From: Octopus sinensis | Lineage: Eukaryota | Direction of reading: 5' to 3' | DNA length: 64,000 nt | Assembly (NCBI RefSeq): GCF_006345805.1 | Contig: NC_043005.1 | Location: forward strand, 100,316,001-100,380,000 | Shown here: positions 250-57,109 of the stretch, one piece after another | How positions within the stretch are numbered: the stretch's first letter is position 1 | How the letters are laid out: each line of letters opens with the position of its first letter | Made by a program: the position numbers and the translations under genes | The notes under the pieces: model-generated | Seen by the model: only the letters and a program-made list of their open reading frames with translations | Told to the model about the DNA's origin: nothing | The model's database searches: none

Positions 250-570
250 GACAAGAGAGAGGGATTTTCATGGAAGACCAAATATGCTTGACTAGCACTA
301 TGACCCGGCAACGCCGGTGGCACATAAAATACACCAATCTGACCGTGGCCGTTGCCAGCCCCGCCTGGCACCTGTGCAGGTGGCACGTAAAAAGCACCCA
401 CTACACTCACGGAGTGGTTGGCGTTAGGAAGGGCATCCAGCTGTAGAAACATTGCCAGATTAGACTGGAGCCTGGTGCAGCCTTTTGGCTTCCCAGAACC
501 CCTGTCGAACCGTCCAACCCATGCTAGCATGGAGAACGGACGTTAAACGACGATGATGATGATGATGATA
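250..570 (+). mobile_element. RTE-clade LINE 3' UTR fragment (5'-truncated)
   Basis: TGCC-GGT-GGCAC-GTAAAAAGCACC units, then GTGGTTGGCGTTAGGAAGGGCATCCAGCTGTAGAAAC and a (GAT)n tail; the same sequence follows the RTE ORF2 remnant at 24280-25536. Confidence 0.8.
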
Positions 571-1941: not shown

Positions 1942-2748
1942 TTATGTCACTCTTCCTGATTTTATTCCAAGGACCACTTCTTGAAGACTGAAAAGGGAAA
2001 CTTTTACTCATGCTTACGTTACTCTTATAAAATAGACAGGTAATAGTGTGTTATGTTGCACATTCGGATGCCTCTACTCAACTCTACTCTCGGACAGCTA
2101 CTCTTCTCTCTATATATCTACGTATTGGGCTAGCCTGCTTCATCGTCTGGGAGCGTCCACACAACATAGTGGTTGTTATTTTGTCTGGCATCTCAGCATT
2201 TTACATTTGTTTGCCAAACTAGCATGGGTTTGATGGGTCTTTACAGTTTGAGTATAATTTTATTCATAGTTACTTCACTTCAAAGCAAGTTGGGGGAATA
2301 TTTACCTCAAGTTATCTTAAGGAACAGCTAAATGGTTCACTGGTTATTTACCTTGTCTGAATATCAAAGACACAACACAACAAAACACAACCCAACCCAA
2401 TGCAACACAACACAATACACACACAAAATCAAAACAGGTGTGAATTGATGAAAAGACCTTTATACAGGAAAACTTAAGTCTCTGCTTCATCTCATGTCAC
2501 ACCAACTCACACCTATTTCCTGTTTTTACTTGTACATTTTCATTTGTGATTTACACCGATACAGACCAGAACAAGTCACCAGTTCTCATGACCATCAATA
2601 CTCATAATACCAGTTACATCTTCCTCTTCTCTACTTATGCTCTAATGTAGAAAATTGGTCAGAGCCTGACATAAAATACTGATACCAATAATGTTAATAA
2701 CCAAGATAGTACAACTAGCGAATAGAAATGTTAGTAAAGTTGATAGAT

Positions 2749-3170
2749 AGGCGTAGGAGTGGCTGTGTGGTAAGTAGCTTGCTTACCCACCACATGGTTC
2801 TGGGTTCAGTCCCACTGTGTGGCACCTTGGGCAAGTGTCTTCTACTATAGCCTCGGGCCGACCAAAGCCTTGTGATTGGATTTGGTAGATGGAAACTGAA
2901 CGAAGCCTGTCGTATATATTTATATATACGTATATACGAATGTGTGTATGTGTGTGTGTGTGTCTGTGTTTGTCCCCCCAACATTGCTTGACAACCAATG
3001 CTGGTGTGTTTACGTCCCAGTAACTTAGCAGTTCAGCAAAAGGGACTGATAGAATAAGTACTAGGCTTACAAAGAATAAGTCCTGGGGTTGATTTGTTCG
3101 ACTAAAGGCAGTGCTCCAGCATGGCCACAGTCAAATGACTGAAACAAGTAAAAGAGTAAAGAGTAAAGAG
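2749..3170 (+). mobile_element. tRNA-derived SINE, family A
   Basis: A-box-like TGGCTGTGTGG, B-box-like GGTTCAGTCCC, internal (TA)/(TG) tract, tail GACTGAAACAAGTAAAAGAGTAAAGA; at least 8 copies in window. Confidence 0.85.
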
Positions 3171-3447: not shown

Positions 3448-3680
3448 TATTTCTTTATTGCCGACAAGGGGTTAAACATAGAGAGGACAAACAAGGACAG
3501 ACAATGGGATTAAGTCGATTACATCGACTCCAGTGCGTAACTGGTACTTAATTCATCGACCCCGAAAGGATGAAAGGCAAACTCGACCTCGGCAGAATTT
3601 GAACTCAGAATGTAATGGCAGACGAAATACCGCTAAGCATTTCATCCGGCGTGCTAACGTTTCTGCCAACTCGCTGCCTT
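3448..3680 (-). mobile_element. tRNA-derived SINE, family B
   Basis: GAGTTCAAATTC B-box; 16-bp TSD TTTAGTTGCTATTTCT at 3432-3447 and 3681-3696. Confidence 0.9.
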
Positions 3681-9087: not shown

Positions 9088-9912
9088 CAAAGGTTCTCAA
9101 CCGGGGTCCATACAAAGTTTTTTGGGATCCACACAACGAAATAGTAAACTGAGGAGCCACAATGGTATATTAAAGGCCCCTGAAAAAATTTTGCCTTAGG
9201 ACCCGACAAATGAAGTGAGTTCATGGTTCACAGGATGGCCTGCTGTGCTTACCTTGGATCGTAGAGCGACCTGCTGTGCTCGAGGAGACCTACTGAGTCA
9301 AGTACATCAACATCAACATCAAATAAAAATCAAATGGAAATCGTAGTTGCAATACCTGTGCCGGTGGCACGTAAAAATCACCATCTGGACATGGCCAATA
9401 CCAGCACTGCCTTGACTAGTGTCCATGCTGGTGGCACGTAAAAAGCACCAACTGATCGTGGACATTGCCAGCCTCCTCTGGCCCCTGTGCCGGTGGCATA
9501 TAAAAAACATCTACTATACTCATGGAGTGGTTGGCATGGGGAAGGGCATCCAGCTGTAGAAACACTGCCAAATCAGACTGTAGCCTGGTGCAGCCTCCTG
9601 GCTTCCCAGAACCCGGTCGAACCATCCAACCCATGCCAGCATGGAAAACGGACATTAAACGATGATGATGATAATGACGGTGATGTATGTATTCGTATGA
9701 ATTGCAAGAAACAGCCAGGTTTCCTTTCCTATCATTTTACATAGTTCAACCACTACATGTGAATGTGTAAAAAGCAAAACAGCAATTTTGAATGTAGTTT
9801 CTACAAAACTAATTTTTAAACATCAAATGGCAATGGCTAGGGGGGGGGGTATCACCAGAATAAAATATTAATCAAAGGGATCCATAGATAAAAAAATGGT
9901 TAAGAACCCCTG
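9088..9912. mobile_element. hAT-like MITE containing an RTE insertion
   Basis: TIRs CAAAGGTTCTCAACC (9088) and GGTTAAGAACCCCTG (ends 9912); 8-bp flanks match only 5/8. Confidence 0.55.
9205..9690 (+). mobile_element. RTE LINE 3' UTR fragment
   Basis: Several GTGCCGGTGGCAC units, conserved RTE tail, (GAT)n. Confidence 0.85.
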
Positions 9913-10303
9913 GGTTAGATGAATATGCTATTGGAGCAATGGTTTGCAGCTGGATGCTCTTCTGGTTGCTGACCCTCAACTGATTTAATGATTAAAGGGG
10001 TTTCTTATGACATACAGGTTTGAAGGTGTAAAGCAATCAAAGGATTTGTTGAGAGAAGTAACTCCACCACTTGGAGGTCACCAGAGTAATGGAAATGAGT
10101 GCAAAGGCAAACAAATGCACAGACCTGAACACGTGCCCACAAACAACATTCACCACCCCCATAGACATGTACATACATACATATGCTTACATACATATAT
10201 AAACACATGTACATACATATACTCACCCATACATGCATACATACACACACGCACACACTTACATACGAGGGTAGGGGCTGAAAAGTTTTTGGCTTTAAGG
10301 GTT

Positions 10304-10810
10304 TGGATCTTTACACTTTAACCATAACCCTAAAACCCTAACTCTAAAACCTTAACCCTAACTCTAAAACTCTAACCCTAACCCTAAAATCCTAGCCCTA
10401 ACCCTAACTCTAAAACCCTAAGCCTAACCCTAAAATCCTAATCCTAACCCTAAAACCCTAATCCTAACCCTAACTCTAAAACCCTAACCCTAACTCTAAC
10501 CCTAAAGCTCTAAAGCTAAAACCAGGACAAATGTACGAATGATGTCATAAATAACAGTGACAAATGAAATATACATCACCGATAGTTGTTGTTGACAAAC
10601 AATGGCAGCTGAATACACGTCATTGATTGGTTGAAATTACCGAAATACGACTACTTTAACACGAAATAACTTTGAAAATATAAACTTTTCTCAACAACAC
10701 TAAGAGTAAAAGATGTTTTATATGACACATTCTACCAGTGTCCGAAGATTGAAAGTGTTTAGTTACAAAAAATTAATTTCTTGATCTGTCGTTCAAAGGG
10801 AAAAGATCCA
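10304..10810. mobile_element. Non-autonomous TIR element (TGGATCTTT..AAAGATCCA) with telomere-like array
   Basis: 9-bp perfect TIR; 6-bp duplication AGGGTT at 10298-10303 and 10811-10816; splits the mariner MITE. Confidence 0.75.
10321..10520 (+). repeat. Degenerate interstitial (CCCTAA)n telomere-like array
   Basis: CCCTAA, CTCTAA, CCCTAAAA and ATCCTA variants over about 200 bp. Confidence 0.9.
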
Positions 10811-11629
10811 AGGGTTCTTGTGGAAGGCGTGGTTGAAGGTCCAACCTTCTGAGTTTTTTTACAGGGCTTAGAAAAACTTAAGGACTGCTGCAATATGTGT
10901 GTGAAACTGAGAGGGGAATTGAACAAAATCACAATTAACTGATCCTCCTGTATTTTCTTTTAACCAAAGCCAGGGACTTTTCAGTAGTCCCTTGTACATA
11001 TACACATATAACAGACTTCTTTCAGCTTCCATCCATCAAATCCATTTAAAGAGTTTTGCTCAGCCTGAAACTATGAAATATTTACCAAAGGTGCCACATA
11101 ATGGGACTGAACCCAAAATGATGTTTTTAAGAAGCAAATTTCTTAAACAAACAATCGTGCATGTGTCAAAAAAGCATAAAATTTTCCCTGACAAAACATC
11201 TACTTACACAACACATACTTTATGGAGTCAACCAAATGATATAACAAAATTCATGCTCACATACAACATGAACACCAGCTGAAAATACAGCAAGCATTAC
11301 ACAACAGTATACTTTTACTCAAAAGAAAACGAACACAAAACAAGAGCACTGAGAGAGCACAAACCTCCGCCAAGGCGACACCAATGTCCTCTCAACGATT
11401 AGCTAGAAATGATTTTTAAAATGAAATTATCTGAAATGAACCCGACTGCTTTCATAAATTAAGTAAAAAATCAGGTAAAATAATCCAGAATCTTTGTCTG
11501 TAACCACCTTGATTCCAAAATCTAATCAGTTTGTGCCAGTCATGAGGCCAAACATCCCTGAAAGTTTCATCCAAATTCAGCCAGCGGTTCTTTGAGATAT
11601 CTTGACCATGGACAAACAAACAAACACGA

Positions 11630-12030
11630 CTCTTACTCTTTTACTTGTTTTAGTCATTTGACTGTGGCCATGCTGGAGCACCACCTTTAGTCGAGCAAAT
11701 CAACCCTAGAACTTATTCTTAGTAAACCTAGTACTTATTCTATTGGTCTCTTTTGCCAAACCGCTTAGTTATGGAGATGTAAACACACCAGCATCGGATG
11801 TCAAGTGATGTTGGAGGGACAAACAGACACACAAATACACACATATACATACGTATATACATATATATGATGGGCTTCTTTCAGTTTCTGTCTACCAAAT
11901 CCTCTCACAAGGCTTTGGTTGAACTGAGGCTATAGTGGAAGACACTTGCCCAAGATGCCACACAGTGGGACTGAACCCAGAACCATGTGGTTGGTAAGCA
12001 AGCTACTTACCACACAGCCACTCCAGCACC
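11630..12030 (-). mobile_element. SINE family A
   Basis: Reverse complement of the 2749-3170 family, head to tail. Confidence 0.85.
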
Positions 12031-12167
12031 TGTAAACAATACCTCTGCCTTCACTAAGGCAAGGCAGAAGTAATAACATAAAACCAACCACAGAAACACA
12101 ACAACAACACAGTCAAACAGATGCAAATAAAAAAACACAGAATTCAACATCTTCCCAGAAGAAAATG

Positions 12168-12231
<64 letters not shown>

Positions 12232-12591: not shown

Positions 12592-12998
12592 CGCAGGAGT
12601 GGCTGTGTGGTAAGTAGCTTGCTTACCAACCACATGGTTCCGGGTTCAGTCCTACTGTGTGGAACCTTGGACAAGTGTCTTCTACTATAGCCTCAGGCTG
12701 ACCAAAGGCTTGTGAGTGGATTTGATAGACAGAAACTAAAAGAAGCCCGTTGTATATATATATATATGTATGTGTGTGCATATGTTTGTGTGTCTGTATT
12801 TGTCCTCCTCATCATCGTTTGACAAGTGATGCTGGTGTGTTTACATCCTGGTAACTTAGTGGTTTGGCAAAAGAGACTGATAGAATAAGTACTAGGCTTT
12901 CAAAGAATAAGTACTGGGGTCGATTTGCTTGACTAAAGGTGGTGCTCCAGCATGACCACAGTCAAATGACTGAAACAAGTAAAAGAGTAAAAGAGTAA
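12592..12998 (+). mobile_element. SINE family A
   Basis: Head GCAGGAGTGGCTGTGTGG, internal TA/TG tract, family tail. Confidence 0.85.
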
Positions 12999-17806: not shown

Positions 17807-18022
17807 AAGGGAGCTGGCAGAAACGTTAGCATGTTGGGCGAAATATGTAGCCGTATTTCGTCTGCCGTTACGTTCTGAGTTCAAATTCTGCCAAGGTCGA
17901 CTTTGCCTGTCATCCTTTCGGGGTCGATAAATTAAGTACCAGTTATGCACTGGGGTTGATGTAATCGACTTAATCCATTTGTCCTCTCTGTGTTTAGCCC
18001 CTTGTGGGTAGTAAAGAAATAC
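17807..18022 (+). mobile_element. SINE family B
   Basis: 12-bp TSD ATGTAAGAGAAT at 17795-17806 and 18023-18034. Confidence 0.9.
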
Positions 18023-20473: not shown

Positions 20474-20756
20474 AAGATCTGGAAATAGAGGTAGCTCAAC
20501 TGTGGAGCCTAAAAACTGAAACAATTCCTATAATAGTAGGCGCATTAGGTATGATAAAAAAAATTCAGACACGAGGAATTACGAGCATGTACAGCATACA
20601 GAAAATAGCACTACTAGGCACCGCACACATCCTATGTATGACATTTTCAATACAGTGAAAATAAGAGCAGCACAACAGACCACAGCACATACCCAAAGCA
20701 CACAGAGCTGCACTCTGTAGTGCAGTGAAAGCACGTGATAAAAATAAGACACCTGA
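20474..20756 (+). mobile_element. Second Dong/R4-clade LINE 3' end
   Basis: KDLEIEVAQLWSLKTETIPIIVGALGMIKK..IQKIALLGTAHIL; (AAT)n on both sides. Confidence 0.8.
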
Positions 20757-20789
20757 ATAATAATAATAATAATAATAGTAATAATAGTA

Positions 20790-20857
<68 letters not shown>

Positions 20858-20932
20858 AAGAAGAAGAAGAAGAAGAAGAAGAAGAAGAAGAAGAAGAAGA
20901 AGAAGAAGAAGAAGAAGAAGAAGAAGAAGAAG

Positions 20933-20961
<29 letters not shown>
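20757..20961 (+). repeat. (AAT)n followed by perfect (AAG)n
   Basis: Direct inspection. Confidence 0.95.
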
Positions 20962-20963
<2 letters not shown>

Positions 20964-22367
20964 GCTTCTAAGACCTTGTAAGACTTCTGTTATGACTGGG
21001 ATACAGCAAACTTTACAGCAATTCCACACCCTTAATTTTTTATTTTTTGTCTACCATTTTTGTATCAAATGAATAAACCATACTGATTGTGTAATACACT
21101 CTTTCCCTTTCAGTGAATGCAACAATATCTGGGCATAAATATTCTATTTAGCTATGTGTTAATTTTCATATCTCATTAATACCTTTCAAAGATGTGCTGT
21201 ACCATTTTTCGACATTCCAAAACATTTTTTTACAGATATGCTAATATGAAACTGTAAACACTTTGGAATTGTCTTTAGTTCTTGTAAACACCAAGATTCA
21301 ATATTCTACATTTAGAGATTACATTACCAACTGTCTTCTCTTTCACCAGACACTCTACATTCAGCAAAGATGTCTTCTATATGAATCTTTTTCTGATTGC
21401 TTGATCCTGCAAAGTTGTGATAAAACCCTCTGTCTCTTTTTTCAAAATGCCCCTCTTTAACCCTTTACCATTTAAACCGGTTATATCCAGCCAAAAGTAT
21501 TCTGCCATTTTTATGTTCAAACTGGCCAGATCTGGTCTCTCGCACCAACCCTACAATATCGTTTTAAAAATTAACAGCTGCCTCATCAAAATCTCATAGC
21601 TACAAGATAATGCATGATTAATTCTAATCAATATGGGTAAAAAAGCATTAATTTTGGTAGAATAATGCGAACACTATAGGGTTAATCACTAAAACTACTT
21701 CTGATCTTGACCCCCTTCAGTACTTGAAAAAACAAAAAAACCCAAAAAGAAAGACCAAAAAACACTTCCCCGCCCCCATCCCCAAAAACTTTTCTGTTCC
21801 TATCTTTGCTTCCTAGCTTCAAGAATTTCATTTCTTTTTTCTTCCTCAGTTGATAGCTACTATCTCCTTATTCCTATCAAAAGTGCATCACCACTCCCAT
21901 TAACATACTTCCTATATTTCCACCTGATCTTCTAGACTTATCTGACCCCTTCCTTCAGTCTTTCTCTTGAAATACAATCTTGTCAACATCTACCTGCAGG
22001 TGTGAGGTACAGTAGATTTTCAGCGATTTCCTCATTTTGTTTTTCTTATCAACATTCTCAAGGTCTCCCTTTATCCATTTGTCTTTTCTGACATTTAATC
22101 TCAGTTGTCGAAGCTTATCCTTCAGTTATTCTGTTGCAACATTCATTTCCTTGTTTCCTTTTTCCTTGTATTTCCTTTCTAGTGTTTTAATCACTCTTTC
22201 TTTTCATAGTACATCCTCATCCTCTTTAGATAGCTGTAGCTGACTCACTTCCCAAGCTCTCTTGATGCTTTCTTCTATCCATCCTTTCCAACAAGTATTT
22301 GTCCCTTCTCGAGTTACCTGTTGTGTAGGAGGGGGTGCTGAAAAGTTCCTGGCTTTAAGGGTATTGT

Positions 22368-22786
22368 TTAAGGTGTCAAGCTAGCAGAAACGTTTGCACA
22401 CCGGGCAAAATGCTTAGCGGTATTTCGTCTGCCATTGCGTTCTGAGTTCAAATTCCGCCGAGGTTGACTTTGCCATTCATCCTTTCGGGGTCGATTAAAT
22501 AAGTACCAGTTACGCATTAGGGTCGATATAATCGACTTAATCCGTTTGTCTGTCCTTGTTTGTCCTCTCTGTGTTAAGCACCTTGTGTGTAGTAAAGAAC
22601 TATGTATTTCTTCTGCCGTTACGTTCTGAGTTCAAATTCCGTCGAGGTCGACTTTGCCTTTCATCCTTTCAGGGTCGATAAATAAAGTACCAGTTATGCA
22701 CTGGGGTCGATGTAATTGACTTAATCCGTTTGTCTGTCCTTGTTTGTCCTCTCTGTGTTCAGCCCCTTGTGGGTAGTAAAGAAATA
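22368..22786 (+). mobile_element. SINE family B head-to-tail dimer
   Basis: Full copy plus 5'-truncated copy inside one TSD GGTATTGT (22360-22367, 22787-22794). Confidence 0.85.
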
Positions 22787-22892
22787 GGTATTGTGAAAGG
22801 CTTGGCTGGAGGCCCAACATTCTAAGTTCTTTTACAGGGTTTAGAAAAACTGAAGGACCACTGCAGTAATTGTGTGAATCTAAGAGGAGAAT

Positions 22893-23193
22893 ATATAAAA
22901 CTTCAACTATCACTATCTCCTCTGAGACCCTGCAGCGCAAGTTGACCAAAATCGAGAGTATGATAGAAGAAGGCTTGCTCTTCCTTCCGTAGAAAAAAAA
23001 TTCAAATCGGACCATGTTAACACCAAAAATTATTTACATCAAAAAGGTGCTTTTTTTTTCTATGAAAATCCCTATTTTTTATGATTTTTTGACTGCTGTG
23101 TCGCCAGGAAAATGTTCACAAATTTCTACTTTTCTAAAATTCCAATTCTAAAGGGTCGAAACAAATCCGAGCAATGCTGGGCGATACTGCTAG
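22893..23193 (+). mobile_element. Non-autonomous Helitron-like element
   Basis: 3' end CCGAGCAATGCTGGGCGATACTG-CTAG|T (GC-rich hairpin plus CTAG), matching the 56004 element terminus. Confidence 0.65.
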
Positions 23194-23869
23194 TGTTGAA
23201 TAAAATCATAATTAACTGATCCTCCTGTATTTTCTTTTACCCAAAGCTAAGAACTTTTCAGCACCCCCTCATAACCAAATCTTGTTCCACTGTTGCTGCT
23301 ATAGCCTTATATAGGTTATTTGCTGCTAAGAGAGGAGAAGCACCTGCCCTATAACATGGCCAATTTATTTCATTTATTGCTTTACTCTCATTCTATTACA
23401 TCCTCTAAGGCGGGAAGGCTTTTCATTGCCGTTTAATTCAAGTTGGTCTAATATCTTCTCCAACAATTCCCTGTCCTTGTTGCTCTGCCACATTCGCAAT
23501 TTTATTTCCTCTTTACCCATTTAATCTAATCTTCAATGAGATACTTTAACAATTTCTTTGTCTCTCTATATCCTTAACCTACACTCACCTCTTCTGCACT
23601 GTTATTCTCTCATTGGGGCTTCTCTTACCTGTTTAGTTTCTCTTCATTCCAGGTTTGATAGGTAGCCATCATGCTTTAAAGAATGAGCCTGCCTCTGCCA
23701 GTTTCTCTTCTGTCCCTGAAAACACATCCAGCTCATTCCAGATTGTTAACATTATTTGTCAACACCCTCTCTATTTGTGTCACTCACAAAATAGCATTTC
23801 ATTGTGAAATTAACATATTTTCTTTTACATAAAATAGAGTTGTTGTTGTTGTTGTTGTCGTTATTAAGC

Positions 23870-24040: not shown

Positions 24041-24279
24041 TGAAGACATCACAGAATAACCAATATTGCTATGTTGTTGACTGAAGATATTGTGTGTACC
24101 AGGGATTTGTGCTGTCTGTCAGGTCAGAACAAGGACTTCAGACAGATAGCACTTTACACCAGAAGGGAATCTAGGAGACAGGTTTACTTAGCTAGAGGGG
24201 AAGCAGATAAGAACAAAATTTGCCATTGTTATGCATCATGAGTACCTAAGACTTGAAATGTTTCGTGTGAGAGAGAATC

Positions 24280-25536
24280 GTTATGTCATAGGAGAGAAAT
24301 GTTTCAGGTGTGGAAGCAAGGTCTAGAATCGAAGGCCCCTAGAGTCAATCTGGCAAAAACAAAAGTCTCAGTAAGTAGGAAGGCAGACAAATCACAAATC
24401 CCTTCAAGTAGATGGCTCTGCTTGATCTGTAGGAAAAGTGTAGGTAGAAACTCTATAAGATGTACCTGGTGTAAGCTATGGACACATAAGAGGTGCAGCA
24501 ATATCAAAGGAAGGCTGATTTGGAAGATAGTTTTTGTGTGTGGCAGATGCACAAGGGCAATAAACACTGGAAATGTGCAGAAAACAAATTCCATCTTATG
24601 CCAGGGAGAAAACTAGAAGTAGCTGATACCTAGGTAACCAAGTTAGTAGCAGGGGTGGATGATCTGAGAGTGTAGTGACTAGAATAAGAATAGGCTGGGC
24701 AAAGATCAGAGATCTACCTCTGTTGGTAACAAAGGGCCTCTCACTCAGAGTGAATGGTAGACTGTATGATGCATGTGTGTGAACAGCCATGCTACACAGC
24801 AGTGAAACATGGGCTGTGACTGCTGAGGACATGCATAATATTACAAGAAATGAAGCTAGTATGCTCTGCTGGATGTGTAATGTCAGTGTGCATACATGAC
24901 AGAGTGTAAGCACACTGAGAGAAAAATTGAACATAAGAAGCATCAGATGTAGTGTGCAAGAGAGACAACTGCACTGGTAAGGTCATGTGTTAGGAAGACC
25001 TGGGACAGCTGTGTGTAAAAGTGTCACACCCTTGCAGTGGAGGAAACCTGTGGAAGAGGGAGACCCAGGAAGACCTAGGATGAGGTGGTGAAGCACGACC
25101 TTTCAACATTGGGACTCACAGTGGCAATGAAAAGTGACTGAGACTTTTGGAGATATGCTGTGCTTGAGAAAACCTAGCAAACCAAGTGAGACCATAGCCA
25201 TAGCCCATGCCAGTGCAGCATAACCGGCCATTTTAAGAGTACCTTTCAATCATTGGGCAATATGCTGTGCTTGAGAAGACTTGTTGAACCAAGTGGAAAC
25301 ATTGTCATGGCCGATGCCAGTATTGCTTGACTGGCACCCATGCATCTGGCACATAAAAAGCACCATATGAGCGTGGTCATATGTAAAAAGCACCCACTAC
25401 ACACTTGTAGTGGTTGGCATTAGGAAAGGCATCCAGCTGTAGAAACCTGGTGCAGCCACCTGGCTTGCCAGTCCTCAGTCAAACTGTCCAACCCACATCA
25501 GCATGGACATTAAATGATGATGATGATGATGATGAT
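24280..25536 (+). mobile_element. RTE-clade LINE, ORF2 C-terminal half plus 3' UTR (frameshifted)
   Basis: WKQGLESK..RVNLAKTKV, C4HC3 finger, ETWAVT, MLCWMCN, GRGRPRKT, then GGCAC units and (GAT)n. Confidence 0.85.
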
Positions 25537-28582: not shown

Positions 28583-28809
28583 GGTGGTGAGCTGGCAGAA
28601 ACGTTAGCACGCCAGGCGAAATGCTTAGTCATATTTTGTCTGCCGTTATGTTCTGAGTTCAAATTCCGCCGAGGTCGACTTTGCCTTTCATCCCTTCGGG
28701 GTCGATTAAATAAGTACCAGTTATACACTGGGGTCGATATAATCGACTTAATCAGTTTGTCTGTCCTTGTTTATCCCTTCTGTTTATCCTTGTGGGTAGT
28801 AAAGAAATA
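28583..28809 (+). mobile_element. SINE family B
   Basis: 15-bp TSD GGTATGTTGTAACAT at 28568-28582 and 28810-28824. Confidence 0.9.
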
Positions 28810-30298
28810 GGTATGTTGTAACATACCATTTTACTGGTATTTACAAAAGATGTAACTGCCTCAGTTTCCGCAAGAGTCTCATTGTAACAAATACTCCGAG
28901 TATACAGTACTCCATGTTTTATTTTTTAAAGTACTCCTAGTTCTAGTTTGTCACTTTGTAACAAATACACTAAATACATAGAACTCTTAGTCTAATGCCT
29001 TGTATTAAACTCTGAGTATCTAGTAATCAGAATAACAGTACTGATAATTTGTTACCTTATTTCTGGACAATGGTGTGTGTGTGTAATGATCCAATAAAGA
29101 CAGTGAGGGAAGATTATACATATATGACCAATGTATATCCAATATAAGTAATAAGCAATTCAAAGTGCTTATTACAACTTGATATGATAGGCTTTAGCAA
29201 GGATTTTAACTAAGTGCTTGAATAATAACTATCTGGATATTGCAGCTGTATCTATCACTACACACACACACACATATATGTATGTATATGTATATACATA
29301 TATATAGAGAGAGAGATAGATGTATGTATGTATGTATGTATGCATTGTATGTATATGTATACAGAGAGAGAGAGGGGGCAGCGAGGAAGACTAGGTGAAT
29401 ATTTCTGTGACTGTAAAGGAAGAGACTGAGAGTGGGGAGTGTGTATGGTGCATGGTGTGTGTGTGTGTGCGTGCGTATGCATGCATGAGTGTGTGTAGGA
29501 GTGCATAAAAATATGGAGAAGATATTGAAGGGAAAAAATTGCATGTGCACAGGAGAACGTGTCAGTTCAGCATGCAAGTTTTAAATTTTTTGTGACAGTT
29601 TCTAAATAGATTTGAATGTGCACATGCGTGTGTGTGTGTGTGTGTGCATGAGTGTGTGCATGTATGTGTGTGTGGGAGTGTTTGCATGTGTGTGTTTGTG
29701 TGGTTGTATGTGTATGTGTTCATATTATGCACTAATGTGTATATCTGTATAATATGACTTGTCTAGAATGTTTAACAGTTGTGTGTGTGTGTATCTATGC
29801 ATATGTGTATATGTGTATGTGTGCATTAGTTGTCATGTAGAGGAACATAGATAAAATAAAGTCCAAGTCAGTTACCATTTTCTCAATTCTTGATAAACAT
29901 CAGAAATATCCATTAAACAATTTCTAGATTAAGAGAATATGGATGATTGACTAATGGGCTTTGTCTAGTTACCAGAATTGTGTGGTATCCAAGGTAACAA
30001 TCCAATCTTCCTAGCTGTAAGTAGGTGCCACAATGTGGTATATTTCACTGTACTTTGTCTATGAAAAAAATACTTCAATGCCAACAGTCTAATATACTCA
30101 GATATCTGTAAGTATCAGAGTGTGGTGTACTATGTCTATAACCATGAAATGTAACAGACTAGTCAACCAAGCTGTAAGAAGGTACCTAAATGAAATGTAG
30201 TTTACTCTTTTGTGTCCATATATGAAATACCAATGACCCAATCTATCTAGCTGTATGTTTTGGTTTTATCTTGATATTCTCAGTGAAATATACACATT

Positions 30299-30719: not shown

Positions 30720-31260
30720 GATCAATGGAACAGCCTGTTAGCGAAATTAACATGCAAGTGGCTGAGCACTCCACAGAGATGTGGACCCTTAGCATAATTC
30801 TCAGGGAGATTCAGCATGATATGGAATGGGACAAGGCTGGCCCTTTTGGAATGGGAGAAGCCAGCGAGCTGGCAGAAATGTTAGCATGCTGGGCGAAATG
30901 CTTAGCGGTATTTCGTCTGCCGCTATGTTCTGAGTTCAAATTCCACCGAGGTTGACTTAGCCTTTCATCGTTTCGGGGGTCGATTAAATAAGTACCAGTT
31001 ATGCACTGGGGTCGATGTAATTGACTTAATCCATTTGTCTGTCCTTGTTTGTCCCCTCTGTGTATAGCCCCTTGTGGGCAATAAAAATATTAGGCTGGCC
31101 CTTTTGAATTACTGGTACAACTTATTTTTGCCAGCTGAGTGGACTGAAGCAAAGTGAAAAAAAGTGTCTTGCTCAAGGACACAACACGTCACCAAGAATT
31201 GAACTCATGACCTTATGATTGTGAGCCAAATACCCTAACCAGTGAGCCATGTGCCTAAGT
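30720..31260 (-). mobile_element. SINE family C split by SINE B
   Basis: GCCAGCTGAGTGGACTGAAGC..GTGTCTTGCTCAAGG; AGGCTGGCCCTTTTG repeated either side of the insert. Confidence 0.65.
30865..31090 (+). mobile_element. SINE family B
   Basis: Full head to tail GCCCCTTGTGGGCAATAAAAATA. Confidence 0.9.
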
Positions 31261-34099: not shown

Positions 34100-34705
34100 T
34101 TACAGGGTTTTACTTCAACAAAATGACCCCAGTACTTATATTTTAAAACCGGGTAATTTTTCTATCAGTTTCTTTAGTTGAGCCATTAAGTTAAGAAATG
34201 TAAACAAAGCAACACCAGTTGTCAAGTGGAGGTGGTGGTAGTGGTGGTGGTGATGGGATGACAAACACAAACACAAACACATATATGATTGCTTTCTTGC
34301 ACATACATGATTAATTTCTTTCAGTTTCTTATTTCTTTATTGCCCACAAGGGGCTAAACATAGATGGGGAAAAAAAGGACAGACAAAGGGATTAAGTCGA
34401 TTACATCGACCCCAGTGCATTACTGGTACTTAATTTATCAACCTCAAAAGGATGAAAGGCAAAGTCGACCTTGGCGGAATTTGAACTCAGAACGTAGTGT
34501 CAGACGAAATAGTGCAAAGCATTTCACCCGACGTGCTAACGTTTCTACCAGCTCACCACCTTAATTTCTTTCAGTTTCTGTCTATCAAATCCCCTTGCAA
34601 GGCTTTGGTTGGCTTGGGGCTATAGTAGAAGACACTTGGCCAAGGAGCCATATGAACCCAGTACCATGTGGTTGGGAAGCAAACTTCTTACCACACAGCC
34701 ACACT
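34100..34705 (-). mobile_element. SINE family A (degenerate) split by SINE B
   Basis: Family A halves flank 34330-34560. Confidence 0.7.
34330..34560 (-). mobile_element. SINE family B
   Basis: 19-bp TSD TTAATTTCTTTCAGTTTCT at 34311-34329 and 34561-34579. Confidence 0.9.
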
Positions 34706-35647
34706 TGTGCTACACCAGAAGTTTGAATGGCAAGAAAAGGGTTCTGATGTATTTAGGGATCGACCCTTACTATTTGAGACGGAGAGAAGGGTGAAAGGAA
34801 AGAGAGATGGGAAGAGAGAGAGAGAGAGGGGGGATAGACAAATAGATAAATAGACAGACAGACAGACAGACAGATAGATAGATAGATAGATTTGTCAGAC
34901 AGAAACTGAAAGAAGCCCATTACATATGTGTGTGTGTATTTGTGTTTGTCCCACCATCACCACCACTCAACAAATGGTGTTGGTTTGTTTATGTCCCTTA
35001 ACTTCAGGGTTCAACAAAGGAAATACTTTCTGTTTTCAAAGTATATCTGAGGTTCATGCTGAAATCAATGAGGGAAGAGGTGATTACTGTGTGGGGCAGA
35101 AACCAAATTCCTCAACCACCAAAGTTGGTTTGGTGGTATTATAATCCTTAATATCTGACTAAAATAAACTCAACAGCCATTACAATTAAAATCCATAAAA
35201 CAGCAATAAACCTAATTTACTGTGATGGGAGAAAGGTAGCCAGTGTGATAACCTGGGAAAGACGGCAACAATTATAATATAAAATAATGAAACAAAATAT
35301 ACAACACAAGGATAGATTATATTGCAAGTTAGAAAGTTGAGAATTGCTTTCTAACAACTAATATAACAAACTTTAACAAAACATTAGCTGCAACATAATA
35401 GAAAATATTACAGCAGAAAAACACAGCAGTAAACATTAAATACTTAATAACTGCTTAATTTGCTTCACCTTTAATCCCTCACCTTTGTTATCTTGGCTCT
35501 TTTATAACCAGCCATATGGTTACCATAAAATACAAATTATCATCAGACATATTCACATGAAACATGGTTCTTGTGTGATAGTGTTTCTACTGGCAATGAT
35601 GATGATGACGATGATGATAATGGTATTGTTCATAAAAATTATGCTAC

Positions 35648-35649
<2 letters not shown>

Positions 35650-35692
<43 letters not shown>

Positions 35693-35749
35693 GTGTACGT
35701 GTGTGTATGTGCATAAGAGTGTGCATGTATATATATGTGTGTGTATGTA

Positions 35750-35811
<62 letters not shown>

Positions 35812-35988
35812 TATATCTATATATATATATATATACATGTATATACATATGCATACATATACATATATGTATATATATATATACATGTATATATACATAT
35901 GCATACATATACATATATATATATATGTATATATATATATACATGTATATATACATATGCATACATATACATATATATATATATATAT

Positions 35989-36058
<70 letters not shown>

Positions 36059-36080
36059 ATATGTATGCATATGTATATAT
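35650..36080. repeat. (TA)n-rich compound microsatellite
   Basis: Direct inspection. Confidence 0.95.
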
Positions 36081-36815
36081 AAAGATATAAATTGGAAAGT
36101 TCTATTGGAGAACATCAGTAGTTGGCAAGGTGGAAATAATTATTTGGTCAAAGTTTCAGATCTGGGTTTTCTGGAAATATAACCAAAATAAAGATCAGAA
36201 GAATTGGTAGGTCAAAGGTGAAGACATGGAAAATAAGTTGTATTGTTGGGCGTTCTGTTAGAACTGTTTGTTCAGACAAAGCAGTCATATTCACCCACTG
36301 ATCTTTAATTCTATATGATGTTGTTACAGTTTCAGGGAAACGCTACAATAACAAACTAGAAACCTCACTGTTCTTTGTTCAAATCCCAGTTGGATCATCT
36401 TTAACTTTCATCTCCCAAGTAATAAAAATCAATTTTATTCTTAAAGCTATTTGTCCCTTGTTACAACATATGGTTCCCATGGATTATGGAGTCCCTTCTA
36501 ATAACATACATTTCTCTGGAGATACGAAGGCCATTCAAACAACATACATTCCCCTGGAGATATCTGTCTTTATGTCTCCTTAATACCATCAACACACACA
36601 TTACTCACATTGCATCTCAGCAACTTTCACCAGAACTGTGTTGTCATTATAAACATCTTTCAATAGTAATACAGTGTTTATATACACAAATAATAAATAC
36701 ACCACATCAACATAAACATCAATAATAGTAATACAGTGTTTATATACACAAAGAATACACATCGCCCTCAACATCATAAATGCAATGGTTATATTAGATA
36801 TGCAACATATATACC

Positions 36816-37049
36816 TATTTCTTTACTACCCACAAGGGGCCAAACACAGAGAGGACAAACAAGGACAGACAAACGGATTAAGTCAATTATATCAACCCCA
36901 GTGCATAACTGGTACTTATTTAATCGACCCTGAAAGGATGAAAGGCAAAGTCGACCTCGGCGGAATTTGAACTCAGAATGTAACGGCAGACGAAATACGG
37001 CTAGGCATTTCGCCTGGCATGCTAACGTTTCTGCCAGCTCGCCACCTTA
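36816..37049 (-). mobile_element. SINE family B
   Basis: 18-bp TSD ATATGCAA(C/T)ATATATACC at 36798-36815 and 37050-37067. Confidence 0.9.
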
Positions 37050-39985: not shown

Positions 39986-40404
39986 TGTTGTCATGGTTAT
40001 TACTAATATAACACATTTTAGGCTGTTGGTTCTATTACACAAATTACTGAGGTGTCAGCTGTGCTTACTTAGCAAACAAAAAATTTCTATGAAGTATACC
40101 CAAAGATTTTAGCCATCTCTGCATTCAGAAATTAATTAAATTGTATTCGCTGGATGCAGAAAACAGTTGTAAAGGTCAGTCATGGATACTGTCACCATGG
40201 ACAATAAAAGAGGAATTGATTGCGCACCGTTCTTTCTAATTTATTAATCTTCATTAGCGATCAAATACCCTACATGTTAAGGCAACTTTGAAACTGTTTG
40301 AAAGTGATTGCTGCTACACTTACAACAAAAGACAGGTAGACGAATTTCAATGTTGGACACATTTTCTGCAGTTAGTTCTGCTGAATCTTATAGCACACTA
40401 TACT

Positions 40405-40810
40405 CTTTTACTCTTTTACTTGTTTCAGTCATTTGACTGTGGCCATGCTGGAGCACCGCCTTTAGTTGAGCAAATCGACCCCAGAACTTACTCTTTGGAA
40501 GCCTAGAACTTATTCTATCGGTCTCTTTTGCCGAACCACTAAGTTATGGGGACGTAAACACACCACCATGCAGTTCTCAAGTGGTGTTGGGGAGGGACAA
40601 ACACAGACACGCAAACATATATACCCATATATATATATGCATATATACGATGGGCTTCTTTCAGTTTCCTTCTACCAAATCCGCTCACAAGGCTTTGGTC
40701 AGCTCGAGGCTATAGTAGCAGACACTTGCCCAAGGTGCCACGCAGTGGGAATGAACTCGGAACCATGTGGTTGATAAGCAAGCTACTTACCACACAGCCA
40801 CTCCTGCACC
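40405..40810 (-). mobile_element. SINE family A
   Basis: Reverse complement of family A, complete. Confidence 0.85.
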
Positions 40811-40899
40811 TATATAGATAGAAAATATTGTTAAAACTGTTTCATTCTTTTCTTTTTCTTTTTTTTTTTACTGTCTTTTCTTCTTCTTGATAATAATCA

Positions 40900-41989: not shown

Positions 41990-42687
41990 TACTTGATAAT
42001 GATGAGGATGGTGGTTGCGACAATGATGATGAAAATGATGCTGATGATGCTGGGGGTGGAGCGTTGGTGATGATGATTATGATGATGATGATGATGAGAG
42101 ATGATAATATAGTAAAATACTTCTAATAATAAACACCAGAGGGCAGCAATGAGGAGTTTAATGCTGAGTTATTTATGGAATTTAAAATATTCTTGCGATA
42201 ATAATAAAACAATGGCAGAATAAATACGGTCGTATTGGTGGTGTTAGTGGTGATGGTAGTTGGTAGTAGTAGTAGTAGTAGTGGTGTTGAAAGTCGTGGT
42301 AGTGGTAGTGCTAACAATGGTGTGTAGAAGTGTGGTGGTAGTGGTAACGGTGGTGGTATGAAGTGATGTGTTGGTGCCTGTAGTGGTGGTGGCTGAGGTA
42401 GTAGTAGTCATTAGCACTGCTGTTGATGGTAACTGTGCAGGGGTGTAGTGTTTGTGGTGATGGTGATGGTGGTAGTGTTGGTAGTCGTAATGATGGTTGT
42501 AGGGGTCATGGCAATTGTGGTGGTGGTGGAGTGTAGTGGTAATGAGGACAGCAGCTGTAGGGGTAAATGTAGTAGTAGTAGTAGTGGTAGTGGAGGTGGT
42601 GGTGCTAGTAGTGGTGATGGTGGTAGTAGTGATGGCATGGCAATGGTGATGGTAGTAGTAGTAGTAGTAGTAGCGGTGGCGGCGGCG

Positions 42688-42719
<32 letters not shown>

Positions 42720-42920
42720 GGTGGTGTAGAATGGAAAATTGGTGAAGAGGGATGAAACAAGAAATACAATTATGAAGAAGAAAAAACAAGTTTAGAAAAC
42801 AAAAAAGAGAAAAAAACATTGAAAAAAAAACAATGTAACGAGGAAATTTCAAGAGCAGAAAGGCAAAGAGGATGGTGATGATGATGATGATGGTGATGAT
42901 GATAATGATGATGATGATGG

Positions 42921-42951
<31 letters not shown>

Positions 42952-42960
42952 AAGTATCAA
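41990..42960. repeat. Degenerate compound trinucleotide tract (GAT/GTG/TAG)n
   Basis: Direct inspection. Confidence 0.85.
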
Positions 42961-43329: not shown

Positions 43330-43419
43330 GTATATATACATATATATATATAAATACATATGTGTGAGTGTATGTGCTTGTGTAAATGGATGCATATATA
43401 TATATATATAATGTATATA

Positions 43420-43458
<39 letters not shown>

Positions 43459-43465
43459 GTATATA

Positions 43466-43518
<53 letters not shown>

Positions 43519-43542
43519 TATATATAAATGTATATATATATG

Positions 43543-43577
<35 letters not shown>

Positions 43578-43585
43578 GCATATAT

Positions 43586-43635
<50 letters not shown>

Positions 43636-43871
43636 GTAGTGTTTTGTATGTGTGTATGTATCTTAAAGTGTTTTATTTGCTAGTGTTTAGCTTTATTTGT
43701 TTGTTTTTCTTTGATATGAACTTAGTTTCTGTATTTAATGAAGAACACTACCAAAAGGAAGTGTGAAATAAGACAGTCTAAGAAAACTGAGCATTTAGTC
43801 GGGGAGGAGGGGATATATATATATATATATGTATGTATGTATAAATATATATGTATATGTATAAATGTATG

Positions 43872-43915
<44 letters not shown>

Positions 43916-43940
43916 TATACATACATATATATATATATAC

Positions 43941-43980
<40 letters not shown>

Positions 43981-44105
43981 ATATATATAATATATATACA
44001 TACATATACATACATACATATAAACATACACACACACATATATATATATATGTATGTGTGTGTGTTTGTGCAAGTGTATGTGTGTGTGTGTGTATGTGTG
44101 TGTAT
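43330..44105. repeat. Two long (TA)n-rich tracts
   Basis: Direct inspection. Confidence 0.9.
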
Positions 44106-44392
44106 AAGGATGATGTGTGATTACATGATATATGGTAACGGCTGGGCGGTTAGATGGAGGTGTGGTGGAAGTTACAACAGGTTTATTATTGAAGAATTCC
44201 GGCATAAAATAATAGTAGTTATTATGGGAACCTTTGAAAAAAATTTACTGCAAATTTGATGACAAAGAAGAAGAAAGGATGGGGAGGGGCCAAAGTGACA
44301 CAGCAAGTGGGAAAGTGGGGAAGGGGACAGATAATGCTGTGTATGAATGTGCATAAAAATGTGCATGCTTGTATGTATGTATGTGTGTGTGA

Positions 44393-45534: not shown

Positions 45535-45797
45535 TTCCATGCCGGTGGCACGTAAAAAGCACCAACCGATTGTGGCCATTGCCAGCCTCTCCTAGCACCT
45601 GTGCCGGTGGCATGTAAAAAGCACCCACTACACTCATGGAGTGGTTGGCTTTAGGAAGGGCATGCAGCTGTAGAAACACTGCCAGATCAGACTCGAGCCT
45701 GGTGCAGCCTTCTGGCTTCCCAGACCCTGGTCGAACCGTCCAACCCATGCTAGCATGGCAAACGGACGTTAAATGATGATGATGATGATGATGATGA
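45535..45797 (+). mobile_element. RTE LINE 3' UTR fragment
   Basis: Two GGCAC units, RTE tail, (GAT)n. Confidence 0.85.
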
Positions 45798-46979: not shown

Positions 46980-47433
46980 GTTGCCAGCCTACCCTGGCAC
47001 CTGTGCCGGCGGCACGTAAAAAGCACCATCCATATGTGGCCGATTTCAGCACCACCTTGACTGGCTTCCAGTAAAACCACTAACCGATCATGGCCATTGC
47101 CAGCCTCCCCTGGCACCTGTGCTGGTGGCATGTAAAAAGCACCATCCATACGTGGTCGATGACAGCGCCACCTTGACTGGCTTCCATGCCAGTGGCACGT
47201 AAAAAGCACCATCCGATCGTGGTCATTGCCAGCCTCCCCTGACACCTGTGCCGGTGGCACATGAAAAGCACCCACTACACTCATGAAGTGGTTGGCGTTA
47301 GGAAGGGCATCCAGCTGTAGAAACATTGCCAGATCAGACTGGAGTCTGGTGCAGCCTCCTGACTTCCCAGACCACGGTCGAACAGTCCAGTCCATGCTAG
47401 CATAGAAAACAAACGTTAAACGATGATGATGAT
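46980..47433 (+). mobile_element. RTE LINE 3' UTR fragment with about 5 tandem units
   Basis: Repeated TGCCGGTGGCAC-GTAAAAAGCACC units, RTE tail; inserted in a degenerate GTCATAC-type minisatellite (46640-47480). Confidence 0.85.
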
Positions 47434-47484
47434 GTGTCATATTTGTGGCTGTACAATGTATCATACAGTATTTCATGCAATAAG

Positions 47485-49394: not shown

Positions 49395-49795
49395 ATAATG
49401 CTGTGCTTGAGGAGACCCATTGAGTCAGGCACATCAACATCAAAAAATCAAAAGGAAATTGTAGTTGTGATACCTGTGCTGGTGGCATGTAAAAAGCACC
49501 ATCCGAATATGGGCGATGCCAATGCCGCCTTGACTGGCTTCCATGCCGGTGGCACGTAAAAAGCACCAACCAATCGTGGGCATTGCCAGCCTCCCCTGGC
49601 ACCTGTGCTGGTGGCACGTAAAAAGGACCCACAACACTCATGGGGTGGTTGGCTTTAGGAAGGGCATCCAGCTGTAGAAACACTACCAGATCAGACTGGA
49701 GCCTGGTGCAGCCTCCTGGCTTCCCAGACCACGGTCAAACCGTCAAACCTATGCTAGCATGGAAAACGGACGTTAAACGATGATGAACAATGATG
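49395..49795 (+). mobile_element. RTE LINE 3' UTR fragment
   Basis: Three GGCAC units, RTE tail. Confidence 0.85.
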
Positions 49796-50757
49796 AATAC
49801 CTCTTTGTTTCACCCACATTCTTCTGTCTTAAAATTCCCTTAACCTTACAACTGTGAAATTATATTTCATGGCTATTGCAGTAATGATGTTAAAGATCTA
49901 CCACAAAATCAAATTGGTATTTTCTGCAAGTTACTCTCCTCAATAAACTTGACATATCTCAACAGAAAATAGCTTCAAACAAGACATTCTTCAACAAAAG
50001 ATAGATCGGCATATAACACTACTTTCTGCCATTAGGAGTAATGAAAGGCTTAAACATGTTTCATTGACTCTGTATAAAATACATGATACAACCCTTCTTC
50101 TTTTGATTTGTATTCTTCTGGAACTTTTTCTTTCCTGTCCATTTCTCACTCTCAATCATTAACCTCTAAATAGAATAAATTCTTATACCAAATCAACAAG
50201 GACTGAGTTTTGATATTTCAGTTATGCCTGATGCAACCCATCACGGATTTCCTCTAGGTTTTTTCAACCCTTTTATTAATTGCTTTAATGCCATCTTGTC
50301 CTTTCTGTCCAAATGTTTAACAGAGACTTACAAAGGCTATAACAATTGCTTGCTGTTCTCTAATGGCATTTAAGAAAAGCAGAACTGGGTGAAGACATGC
50401 TTCAGTTTATATATGAGACAACCTAAAGTTGGTAATAAAGAAATACAGAGGGAACGGTTGATGAAAAATAGAAGAAAATAATTTATAAATGGTAGAACAT
50501 CAGATAAAGAATGACCAATTTTTTATACTTCACCAACACTATGTAACATAGATTAGTACACCTGAACACATAAATCGTGATCAAATCAGACATTAGCTTC
50601 CATTTTCTTAGAATGGAAGCCGATGTTTTCTTTTATTTATTCTCTGACTGGAAAAAAAGATATTTGATAATAGTTTGAATTGTTAAGAAATGCAACTTCC
50701 TGATCTATTGTGTGTTATTTCTACATAGAAGAAAGTTACTATCATTAATTTGCTTAC

Positions 50758-51919: not shown

Positions 51920-52020
51920 CGTATATATATATATATATTATATATATATATATTATATATATATAATATATATATATAATATATATATATATATATGATA
52001 TATATATATATGTATATATG

Positions 52021-52051
<31 letters not shown>

Positions 52052-52159
52052 GATATATATATATATAGTATATATATATATATATATGTGTAATATATAT
52101 ATATATATGTGTATATATATATATATAGTATATATATAATATGTATATATATATATATG

Positions 52160-52218
<59 letters not shown>

Positions 52219-52295
52219 TATTATATATGTATATATATATATATATGCATATATATATATGTATATGTATATATATATGTATATATATATATATG

Positions 52296-52346
<51 letters not shown>

Positions 52347-52375
52347 GTATATATATATATATGTATATATATATG

Positions 52376-52420
<45 letters not shown>

Positions 52421-52421
52421 G

Positions 52422-52470
<49 letters not shown>

Positions 52471-52471
52471 G
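51920..52471. repeat. (TA)n-rich tract of about 550 bp
   Basis: Direct inspection. Confidence 0.95.
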
Positions 52472-56458: not shown

Positions 56459-56687
56459 TTATATATATATTTATATATATATATATAGTATATATATAGT
56501 ATATATATATATATATTTATATATATGTATATATATATATATTTACATTATATATGTATTATATATATATATTAGATATATATATATATATAATATATAT
56601 ATGTATATATATATTTATATATATATATATATTTATATATTATATATATAACATTATACACATATGAATAATAATAAATGAATATGT

Positions 56688-57092: not shown

Positions 57093-57109
57093 GCAAATAA
57101 GTGGCTGAT

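What the first reader, a model, noticed from the sequence alone, without database searches (positions are those of the whole stretch)
10298..10816. TG..CA TIR element carrying a telomere-like array, inserted with a 6-bp AGGGTT duplication
Seen: 507 bp bounded by TGGATCTTT and AAAGATCCA, about 200 bp of degenerate (CCCTAA)n inside the left end, and AGGGTT on both flanks. AGGGTT is a permutation of TTAGGG. It cleanly splits a mariner MITE, so the boundaries are independently defined. Established: 6-bp TSDs occur in few DNA transposon groups (for example IS3EU, Polinton, Dada), and I do not recognise these termini as theirs. Inference: an unclassified element that spreads interstitial telomeric repeats and may target telomere-like hexamers. 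The G-rich strand could form G4 or bind telomere proteins.
Basis: partly seen in the sequence, partly recalled or inferred. Interest (0 to 1): 0.7.

Follow-up and report, generated by a model that had tools for sequence, protein, structure and literature searches.

The report
Transposed insert carrying telomere-like repeats
A 507-bp mobile-element insertion in an octopus genome, most likely a leftover long terminal repeat of a retrotransposon, carries about 200 bp of telomere-like repeats; it is a real but fairly ordinary kind of element, and the idea that it aims at telomere-like sites rests on one copy.

Summary
Window 10304-10810 (507 bp) starts TGGATCTTT and ends AAAGATCCA. It is flanked by AGGGTT on both sides and carries a 198-bp telomere-like minisatellite just inside its left end. 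It splits a TA-flanked mariner-like MITE. Two other copies of that MITE, one in this window and one in Octopus sinensis, read straight across the site, so this is a true insertion with a duplication of about 6 bp.

The terminal repeat plus duplication alone is not beyond chance: one third of simulated windows contain such a pattern. The paralogue empty sites carry the proof.

TG..CA ends with a 6-bp duplication mark integrase-type insertion. My best reading is a solo LTR (0.45). The main rival is a small non-autonomous DNA transposon (0.33). IS3EU, Ginger1/2, Polinton and Dada each fail a defining feature.

I could not retrieve a second copy, because no searchable collection holds cephalopod DNA, so class, copy number and target preference remain open. 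The flanking hexamer being a telomere-repeat permutation has about 0.16% chance under random insertion, but it is a single post-hoc case.

The parts
10298..10303 (.). Left copy of the target-site duplication, AGGGTT
   Evidence: Paralogous host copies carry one hexamer-length stretch here.
10304..10810 (.). The inserted element, 507 bp, TG..CA ends, no coding capacity. Orientation is unknown.
   Evidence: The longest stop-free stretch is 44 aa, with no homologue in two protein libraries.
10304..10323 (+). Left terminal inverted repeat (TGGATCTTTACACTTTAACC)
   Evidence: 9/9 perfect, 14/16 extended. By direct reading, 16/20.
10320..10517 (+). Telomere-like minisatellite, C-rich strand on +. Units are AACCCT, AACTCT and AAAACCCT, with periods of 20/26/46/66.
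   Evidence: (family D1).
10518..10790 (.). Unique A+T-rich region with two nested short inverted repeats (10543-10556/10714-10727 and 10587-10599/10687-10699). Promoter-like words occur on both strands.
   Evidence: (DNA fold z = -2.6). No Rfam or tRNA match.
10791..10810 (-). Right terminal inverted repeat (GTTCAAAGGGAAAAGATCCA)
10811..10816 (.). Right copy of the target-site duplication, AGGGTT
10266..10994 (+). Host: TA-flanked mariner-like MITE split by the insertion. Its halves are 10266-10303 and 10817-10994.
   Evidence: (I4 arms 10278-10296/10966-10984).
22328..23271 (+). Second copy of the host MITE, uninterrupted at the site. It carries two tandem SINE copies flanked by GGTATTGT.

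Best explanation
The 507 bp is a genuine transposition product made by an integrase-type (DDE) enzyme. The enzyme joined the two CA-3' ends of the element to target phosphates staggered by 6 bp within AGGGTT, inside a resident mariner-like MITE. Gap repair then duplicated the hexamer.

Most likely the piece left today is a solo LTR: the single long terminal repeat that remains after the two LTRs of an integrated LTR retrotransposon recombine and delete the coding interior. That process keeps the duplication intact.

On this reading the telomere-like minisatellite is a tandem-repeat block of the kind often found in the U3 part of LTRs. Its 20/26/46-bp higher-order periodicity points to local slippage or unequal exchange, not to telomerase synthesis.

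Shown: the insertion, its ends, the duplication, the array structure and the lack of coding capacity. Inferred: the enzyme class (from the end and duplication signature), LTR identity, orientation, and any role of the array.
For: - TG..CA ends, a 9/9 (14/16) terminal inverted repeat and a perfect 6-bp duplication.
- Empty sites in two paralogous host copies.
- LTR retrotransposons give 3-6-bp duplications and TG..CA ends (PMC10045372, PMC6839031).
- The inverted ends are short (20 bp or less), unlike the 40-270, 50-180 and 100-150 bp repeats of the integrase-related DNA transposons Ginger1, Ginger2 and GingerRoot (PMC2836005, PMC6839031).
- It has no coding capacity and a size typical of an LTR.
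- It is not a high-copy element in the sample: one copy in 64 kb and none in 108 kb of fetched octopus loci.
Against: - No second copy was found, so no pair of direct repeats around gag-pol, no primer-binding site and no polypurine tract could be shown.
- The 5' end is TGGAT, not the TGTNR of the vast majority of Gypsy LTRs (PMC2836005).
- Most LTR elements give 5-bp duplications (PMC6839031).
- There is no canonical poly(A) signal on either strand, and TATA/CCAAT-like words occur on both strands.
- Nested internal inverted repeats and a fold z-score of -2.6 are more MITE-like.
Confidence: 0.45

Rival explanations
1. It is a small non-autonomous cut-and-paste DNA transposon (MITE-like) with short TG..CA inverted ends and a 6-bp duplication. 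It would be moved in trans by an integrase-related transposase of the IS3EU/GingerRoot kind or of an undescribed group. The hexamer array next to one end could serve as repeated subterminal binding sites.
For: - It has terminal inverted repeats, a duplication, small size, no coding capacity, nested internal inverted repeats and a fold z of -2.6.
- GingerRoot makes 6-bp duplications, and 5 of 77 copies have TG..CA ends (PMC6839031).
- Tandem-repeat-bearing MITE-like elements are well known in molluscs (PMC3879986).
Against: - IS3EU always has TA..TA ends (PMC10045372).
- GingerRoot inverted repeats are 100-150 bp and Ginger repeats 40-270 bp (PMC6839031, PMC2836005), against 20 bp or less here.
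- No transposase-bearing relative could be looked for.
- No other copy was seen in 172 kb of octopod sequence, although MITEs are usually abundant.
Confidence: 0.33
2. Whatever its class, the family prefers telomere-like hexamers as targets and so seeds interstitial telomere-like arrays across chromosomes.
For: - The duplicated hexamer AGGGTT is a cyclic permutation of the telomere unit.
- Only 0.16% of hexamer positions in the window outside the element are such permutations.
- The hexamer pre-existed in the host MITE.
- TE-borne telomeric repeats have been proposed as a source of interstitial sites (PMC9693754).
Against: - It is a single case noticed after the fact, among many windows and many possible coincidences.
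- One hexamer is not a telomere-protein binding array.
- GingerRoot and most LTR elements show no sequence-specific target (PMC6839031).
Confidence: 0.1
3. The true duplication is 8 bp (AAGGGTTT / AAGGGTTC, 7 of 8) and the ends are GG..CC. That would make it a MITE of an 8-bp-duplication superfamily such as hAT or Merlin.
For: The letters allow this parse. Merlin makes 8-bp duplications (PMC10045372).
Against: It needs a mutation in the duplication, while the 6-bp parse is perfect and gives symmetric ends. The ends do not start as hAT ends usually do (my own knowledge, not tested).
Confidence: 0.07
4. It is not a transposon. A fragment of subtelomeric DNA was captured during double-strand-break repair, and microhomology gave the flanking repeat.
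For: A degenerate telomere-like array next to unique sequence resembles a subtelomere junction. Short interstitial telomeric sites can arise at repaired breaks (PMC9693754, PMC7215372 abstract).
Against: Break-repair insertions have no reason to end in a 9/9 inverted repeat placed exactly at both junctions.
Confidence: 0.03

Closest known systems
Solo LTR of an LTR retrotransposon (Gypsy/BEL/Copia kinds)
   Same: TG..CA ends, short imperfect terminal inverted repeat, duplication within the 3-6 bp range, a few hundred bp, non-coding, and able to hold tandem repeats.
   Different: The 5' end is TGGAT, not TGTNR. 6 bp is the less common duplication length. No partner LTR, primer-binding site, polypurine tract or gag-pol has been seen.
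GingerRoot / IS3EU integrase-related DNA transposons
   Same: 6-bp duplication. A minority of GingerRoot copies have TG..CA ends. They have true inverted ends.
   Different: IS3EU ends are always TA..TA. GingerRoot inverted repeats are 100-150 bp and the elements are 4-13 kb. No transposase relative was found or searchable here.
Tandem-repeat-containing MITE-like elements of molluscs and insects (pearl, DTC84, DINE-1 group)
   Same: Small non-coding elements in molluscs with short inverted repeats, a unique module and an internal short-unit repeat block at one side.
   Different: Those have an AA dinucleotide as the putative duplication, roughly 150-bp core repeats and a tetranucleotide microsatellite, and are thought to be Helitron-like. 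This element has a 6-bp duplication and a hexamer-based array.
Short interstitial telomeric sequences inserted at repaired breaks
   Same: Telomere-like hexamers at a non-terminal site.
   Different: Those are plain (TTAGGG)n without inverted ends, unique cargo or a regular duplication.

Membership tests
LTR retrotransposon LTR (solo LTR) | 5'-TG...CA-3' ends with a short terminal inverted repeat | tested here: met
LTR retrotransposon LTR (solo LTR) | Target-site duplication of 3-6 bp (PMC10045372) | tested here: met
   Perfect 6 bp. Empty sites in paralogues.
LTR retrotransposon LTR (solo LTR) | TGTNR start, typical of most Gypsy LTRs (PMC2836005) | tested here: not met
   It starts TGGAT. 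This argues against typical Gypsy, not against LTRs in general.
LTR retrotransposon LTR (solo LTR) | Other copies as direct pairs around gag-pol, with a primer-binding site and polypurine tract | not testable with these tools
   No cephalopod DNA collection can be searched. There is no second copy in the window or in L012-L016.
LTR retrotransposon LTR (solo LTR) | Promoter and poly(A) signals in one orientation | tested here: inconclusive
   TATAAA occurs on both strands, CCAAT and TGACGT on the minus strand, and there is no AATAAA or ATTAAA.
IS3EU | TA..TA ends (always) with a 6-bp duplication (PMC10045372) | tested here: not met
   The duplication length fits, but the ends are TG..CA.
GingerRoot | 6-bp duplication; ends TA..TA or, rarely, TG..CA (PMC6839031) | tested here: met
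   It matches only the rare end variant.
GingerRoot | Terminal inverted repeats of 100-150 bp | tested here: not met
   The inverted ends are 20 bp or less.
Ginger1 / Ginger2 | TGTNR ends, inverted repeats of 40-270 or 50-180 bp, 4-bp (5-bp) duplication (PMC2836005) | tested here: not met
   TGGAT start, 20 bp or less, 6 bp.
Polinton/Maverick (non-autonomous) | 6-bp duplication with AG..TC ends (PMC6839031) | tested here: not met
   The ends are TG..CA.
Dada | No terminal inverted repeats; insertion into tRNA or snRNA genes (PMC3706591) | tested here: not met
   Terminal inverted repeat is present. The target is a mariner-like MITE, with no RNA gene at the site.
pearl/DTC84/DINE-1-like tandem-repeat MITEs | AA putative duplication, core repeats plus tetranucleotide microsatellite (PMC3879986) | tested here: not met
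   6-bp duplication and a hexamer/octamer-unit array only.
Penelope-like pseudo-LTR / retrozyme | Hammerhead ribozyme motif in the repeat | tested here: not met
   No Rfam match inside 10304-10810, even at E up to 10.
MITE (generic) | Small, non-coding, inverted ends, duplication, foldable | tested here: met
MITE (generic) | High copy number | tested here: inconclusive
   One copy in 64 kb and none in 108 kb of octopus loci. The sample is too small to decide.

The most novel reading that the evidence does not exclude
An octopod family of integrase-type elements carries a telomere-like minisatellite next to one end and integrates preferentially at telomere-like hexamers, perhaps through a repeat-binding protein that bridges the element's array and the target. 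It would thereby seed interstitial telomere-like arrays along chromosomes.
Probability: 0.1. Interest if true: 0.6.

Novelty: new member of a known kind. Interest (0 to 1): 0.3.

Why it matters
If it is a solo LTR or a small DNA transposon with a telomere-like repeat block, it is one more uncatalogued cephalopod repeat family. Its use is for repeat annotation, and as a reminder that telomere-like arrays inside chromosomes can arrive as transposon cargo and need not be scars of chromosome fusion.

It would matter more if the family really prefers telomere-like target hexamers. That would be a sequence-level link between a mobile element's cargo and its target choice, and a mechanism for spreading interstitial telomeric sites in a lineage whose karyotype evolution is little studied.

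Tried and rejected
**Searches for a second copy all failed.**
- Self-BLAST of the window.
- One scan of viral contigs.
- Two scans of metagenome contigs: none for the first, and 11 places for the second that share only a 20-23-base chance match in unrelated microbial contigs.
- Exact look-ups of the element's 38-aa ORF and the junction 57-aa ORF.
- A word-indexed search and a full HMMER search with the 44-aa stop-free stretch: nothing.
- BLAST against 108 kb of Octopus sinensis and O. bimaculoides loci fetched around Penelope-like genes: no copy of the element, but a third host MITE.

**Other checks that led nowhere.**
- Rfam and ARAGORN found nothing in the element. The mir-297-like hits at 10136-10304 are microsatellite artefacts.
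- Canonical G-quadruplex motifs are absent.
- Promoter and poly(A) words do not fix an orientation.

**Rejected after reading the defining papers:** membership of IS3EU, Ginger1/2, Polinton, Dada, the pearl/DTC84 group, and Penelope-like or retrozyme repeats.

Full report
**What is there.** Reading 9700-11400 confirms the finding letter for letter.
- AGGGTT lies at 10298-10303 and again at 10811-10816.
- Between them is a 507-bp segment (10304-10810) that starts TGGATCTTT and ends AAAGATCCA.
- The repeat finder gives the terminal arms as 16 nt at 88%. The first 9 bases are perfect, and by direct reading 16 of the first 20 match.
- The segment has no coding capacity. The longest stop-free stretch is 44 aa.

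**The array.** Tandem Repeats Finder reports overlapping arrays from 10320 to 10517 with periods 20, 26, 46 and 66; the best score is for period 46, at 82% matches.
- Cut at the A-runs, the units are AACCCT (10), AACTCT (5) and AAAACCCT (4), plus single variants.
- Two perfect CCCTAA in a row occur only three times.
- It is therefore a structured telomere-like minisatellite, not a simply decayed telomere tract. The higher-order periodicity points to local amplification.
- It holds 15 of the window's 25 CCCTAA hexamers.
- On the G-rich strand there is no canonical quadruplex motif with loops of 7 or less. Six overlapping motifs appear only if loops up to 12 are allowed.

**Is it more than chance?** The pattern alone is not. 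In first-order Markov simulations of the window, a non-low-complexity 9-bp terminal inverted repeat with a matching 6-bp flank turned up at least once in one third of runs. The proof comes from the host.
- The flanks belong to a TA-flanked element with mariner-like inverted ends (10266-10994, pair I4).
- A second copy lies at 22328-23271. It is itself interrupted a few bases further on by two tandem SINE copies flanked by GGTATTGT. Its left piece reads ...TTTAAGGGTATTGT and its right piece GGTATTGTGAAAGG..., so it crosses the site without interruption.
- A third copy, in Octopus sinensis (L014:13520-13700, minus strand), reads CTTTAATGGCATCGTGAAAGG.
- The copy in question reads TTTAAGGGTT[507 bp]AGGGTTCTTGTGGAAGG.
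- The 507 bp plus one hexamer is therefore an insertion, and the hexamer was present in the host before it.

The parse is not unique. AAGGGTT (7 bp) with asymmetric ends also fits the letters, as does a 7/8 8-bp repeat with GG..CC ends. The perfect 6-bp repeat with symmetric TG..CA ends is the most economical.

**Whose genome.** A Penelope-like reading frame elsewhere in the window has its best relatives in Octopus sinensis (64%), Argonauta hians and O. bimaculoides. The window's SINE-like repeats match four O. sinensis loci at 86-95%, and no megablast match was found in the one O. bimaculoides locus fetched. TTAGGG is the only experimentally determined cephalopod telomere motif (PMC13218726; also PMC6160780). 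Calling the array telomere-like is therefore justified.

**What kind of element.** TG..CA ends with a fixed short duplication mark enzymes of the retroviral-integrase kind. From the papers read:
- LTR retrotransposons give 3-6-bp duplications with TG..CA ends (PMC10045372), mostly 5 bp (PMC6839031).
- IS3EU gives 6 bp but always has TA..TA ends (PMC10045372).
- GingerRoot gives 6 bp, with TA..TA ends in 72 of 77 copies and TG..CA in 5, and has inverted repeats of 100-150 bp (PMC6839031).
- Ginger1 and Ginger2 start TGTNR, have inverted repeats of 40-270 and 50-180 bp, and give 4-bp (5-bp) duplications (PMC2836005).
- Polinton has AG..TC ends (PMC6839031).
- Dada has no terminal inverted repeats and inserts into small RNA genes (PMC3706591).
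- The mollusc and insect tandem-repeat MITE-like elements (pearl, DTC84) have an AA dinucleotide at their ends, roughly 150-bp core repeats and a tetranucleotide microsatellite (PMC3879986).

The group it did not name, LTR retrotransposons, fits all features that can be tested on one copy. The exception is that the start is TGGAT and not the TGTNR typical of Gypsy.

A solo LTR is non-coding, a few hundred bp long, keeps its duplication and commonly holds tandem repeats. I rank it first (0.45).

A small non-autonomous DNA transposon remains a serious rival (0.33). The unique region has two nested short inverted repeats and folds better than shuffles (z = -2.6), and GingerRoot shows that 6 bp with TG..CA does occur among DNA transposons.

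Rfam finds no hammerhead or any other family in the element, and ARAGORN finds no tRNA. That speaks against a Penelope-like pseudo-LTR, a retrozyme or a SINE.

**Target choice.** Only 0.16% of hexamer positions in the window outside the element are permutations of the telomere unit. A duplication of AGGGTT next to a telomere-like cargo is therefore an eye-catching coincidence. It is still one case, noticed after the fact among many windows, and no other copy could be examined. I put the targeting reading at about 0.1. That transposons may carry telomeric repeats to internal sites has been proposed before (PMC9693754).

**What could not be done.** The collections open to DNA search hold no cephalopod genome.
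- One viral scan and two metagenome scans gave nothing related.
- Exact look-ups of element ORFs were empty.
- Two protein searches with the longest stop-free stretch were empty.
- 108 kb of octopus loci fetched around Penelope-like genes held no copy.
- Class, copy number, array co-segregation and target preference all remain open. The steps that would settle them are descriptive genome surveys.

Noticed in passing
window 22328-23271: This is the second copy of the mariner-like MITE. It carries two tandem copies of a roughly 190-230-bp SINE (22379-22602 and 22604-22791) flanked by an 8-bp repeat, GGTATTGT. The same SINE family recurs at least 9 times in the window, for example at 3448-3680, 17808-18021, 28589-28814, 30864-31085, 34330-34565 and 36811-37048.
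   Followed up: partly
window 52762-54625 (+): A remnant of a Penelope-like retroelement. Its N-terminal region has homologues that carry DUF8422 (PF28514) and RVT_1, with the best hit in Octopus sinensis at 64%. The reading frame is broken by at least two frameshifts and is truncated.
   Followed up: partly
window 61692-63089 (-): Several minus-strand stop-free stretches include one with a CCHC zinc-knuckle-like motif. It looks like a decayed gag or ORF1 of a retroelement. There is no Pfam hit at E of 0.01 or below.
   Followed up: partly
window 24257-24613 (+): A stop-free stretch with weak, sub-threshold PHD-finger and C1-like zinc-finger matches. It is probably part of a decayed retroelement.
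   Followed up: partly
window 313-569, 9427-9677, 45541-45795, 47188-47434, 49545-49796 and others; 2744-3168, 11630-12034, 12593-12998, 40403-40816, 56682-57097: Two further abundant interspersed repeat families, about 250 bp and about 410 bp, at 75-90% identity. Together with the SINE above they fill much of the window. Their translations produce long spurious ORFs.
   Followed up: no
window 10136-10304: The Rfam sub-threshold hits (mir-297, mir-3149 and others) fall on a TACA/CATA microsatellite just left of the host MITE. They are low-complexity artefacts.
   Followed up: yes
window 12171-12230; 20565-21029; 35485-36115; 42244-42960; 43386-44259; 51953-52820: Long simple-sequence tracts: a perfect (CA)30, trinucleotide runs, and several 0.4-0.9-kb TA/TATG/CATA-rich arrays.
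   Followed up: no
L001-L011: The eleven metagenome contigs returned for the 20-mer GTTCAAAGGGAAAAGATCCA share only 20-23 bases (28 at 89% in one) with the element and nothing else. They are chance matches in 40-46% G+C contigs.
   Followed up: yes
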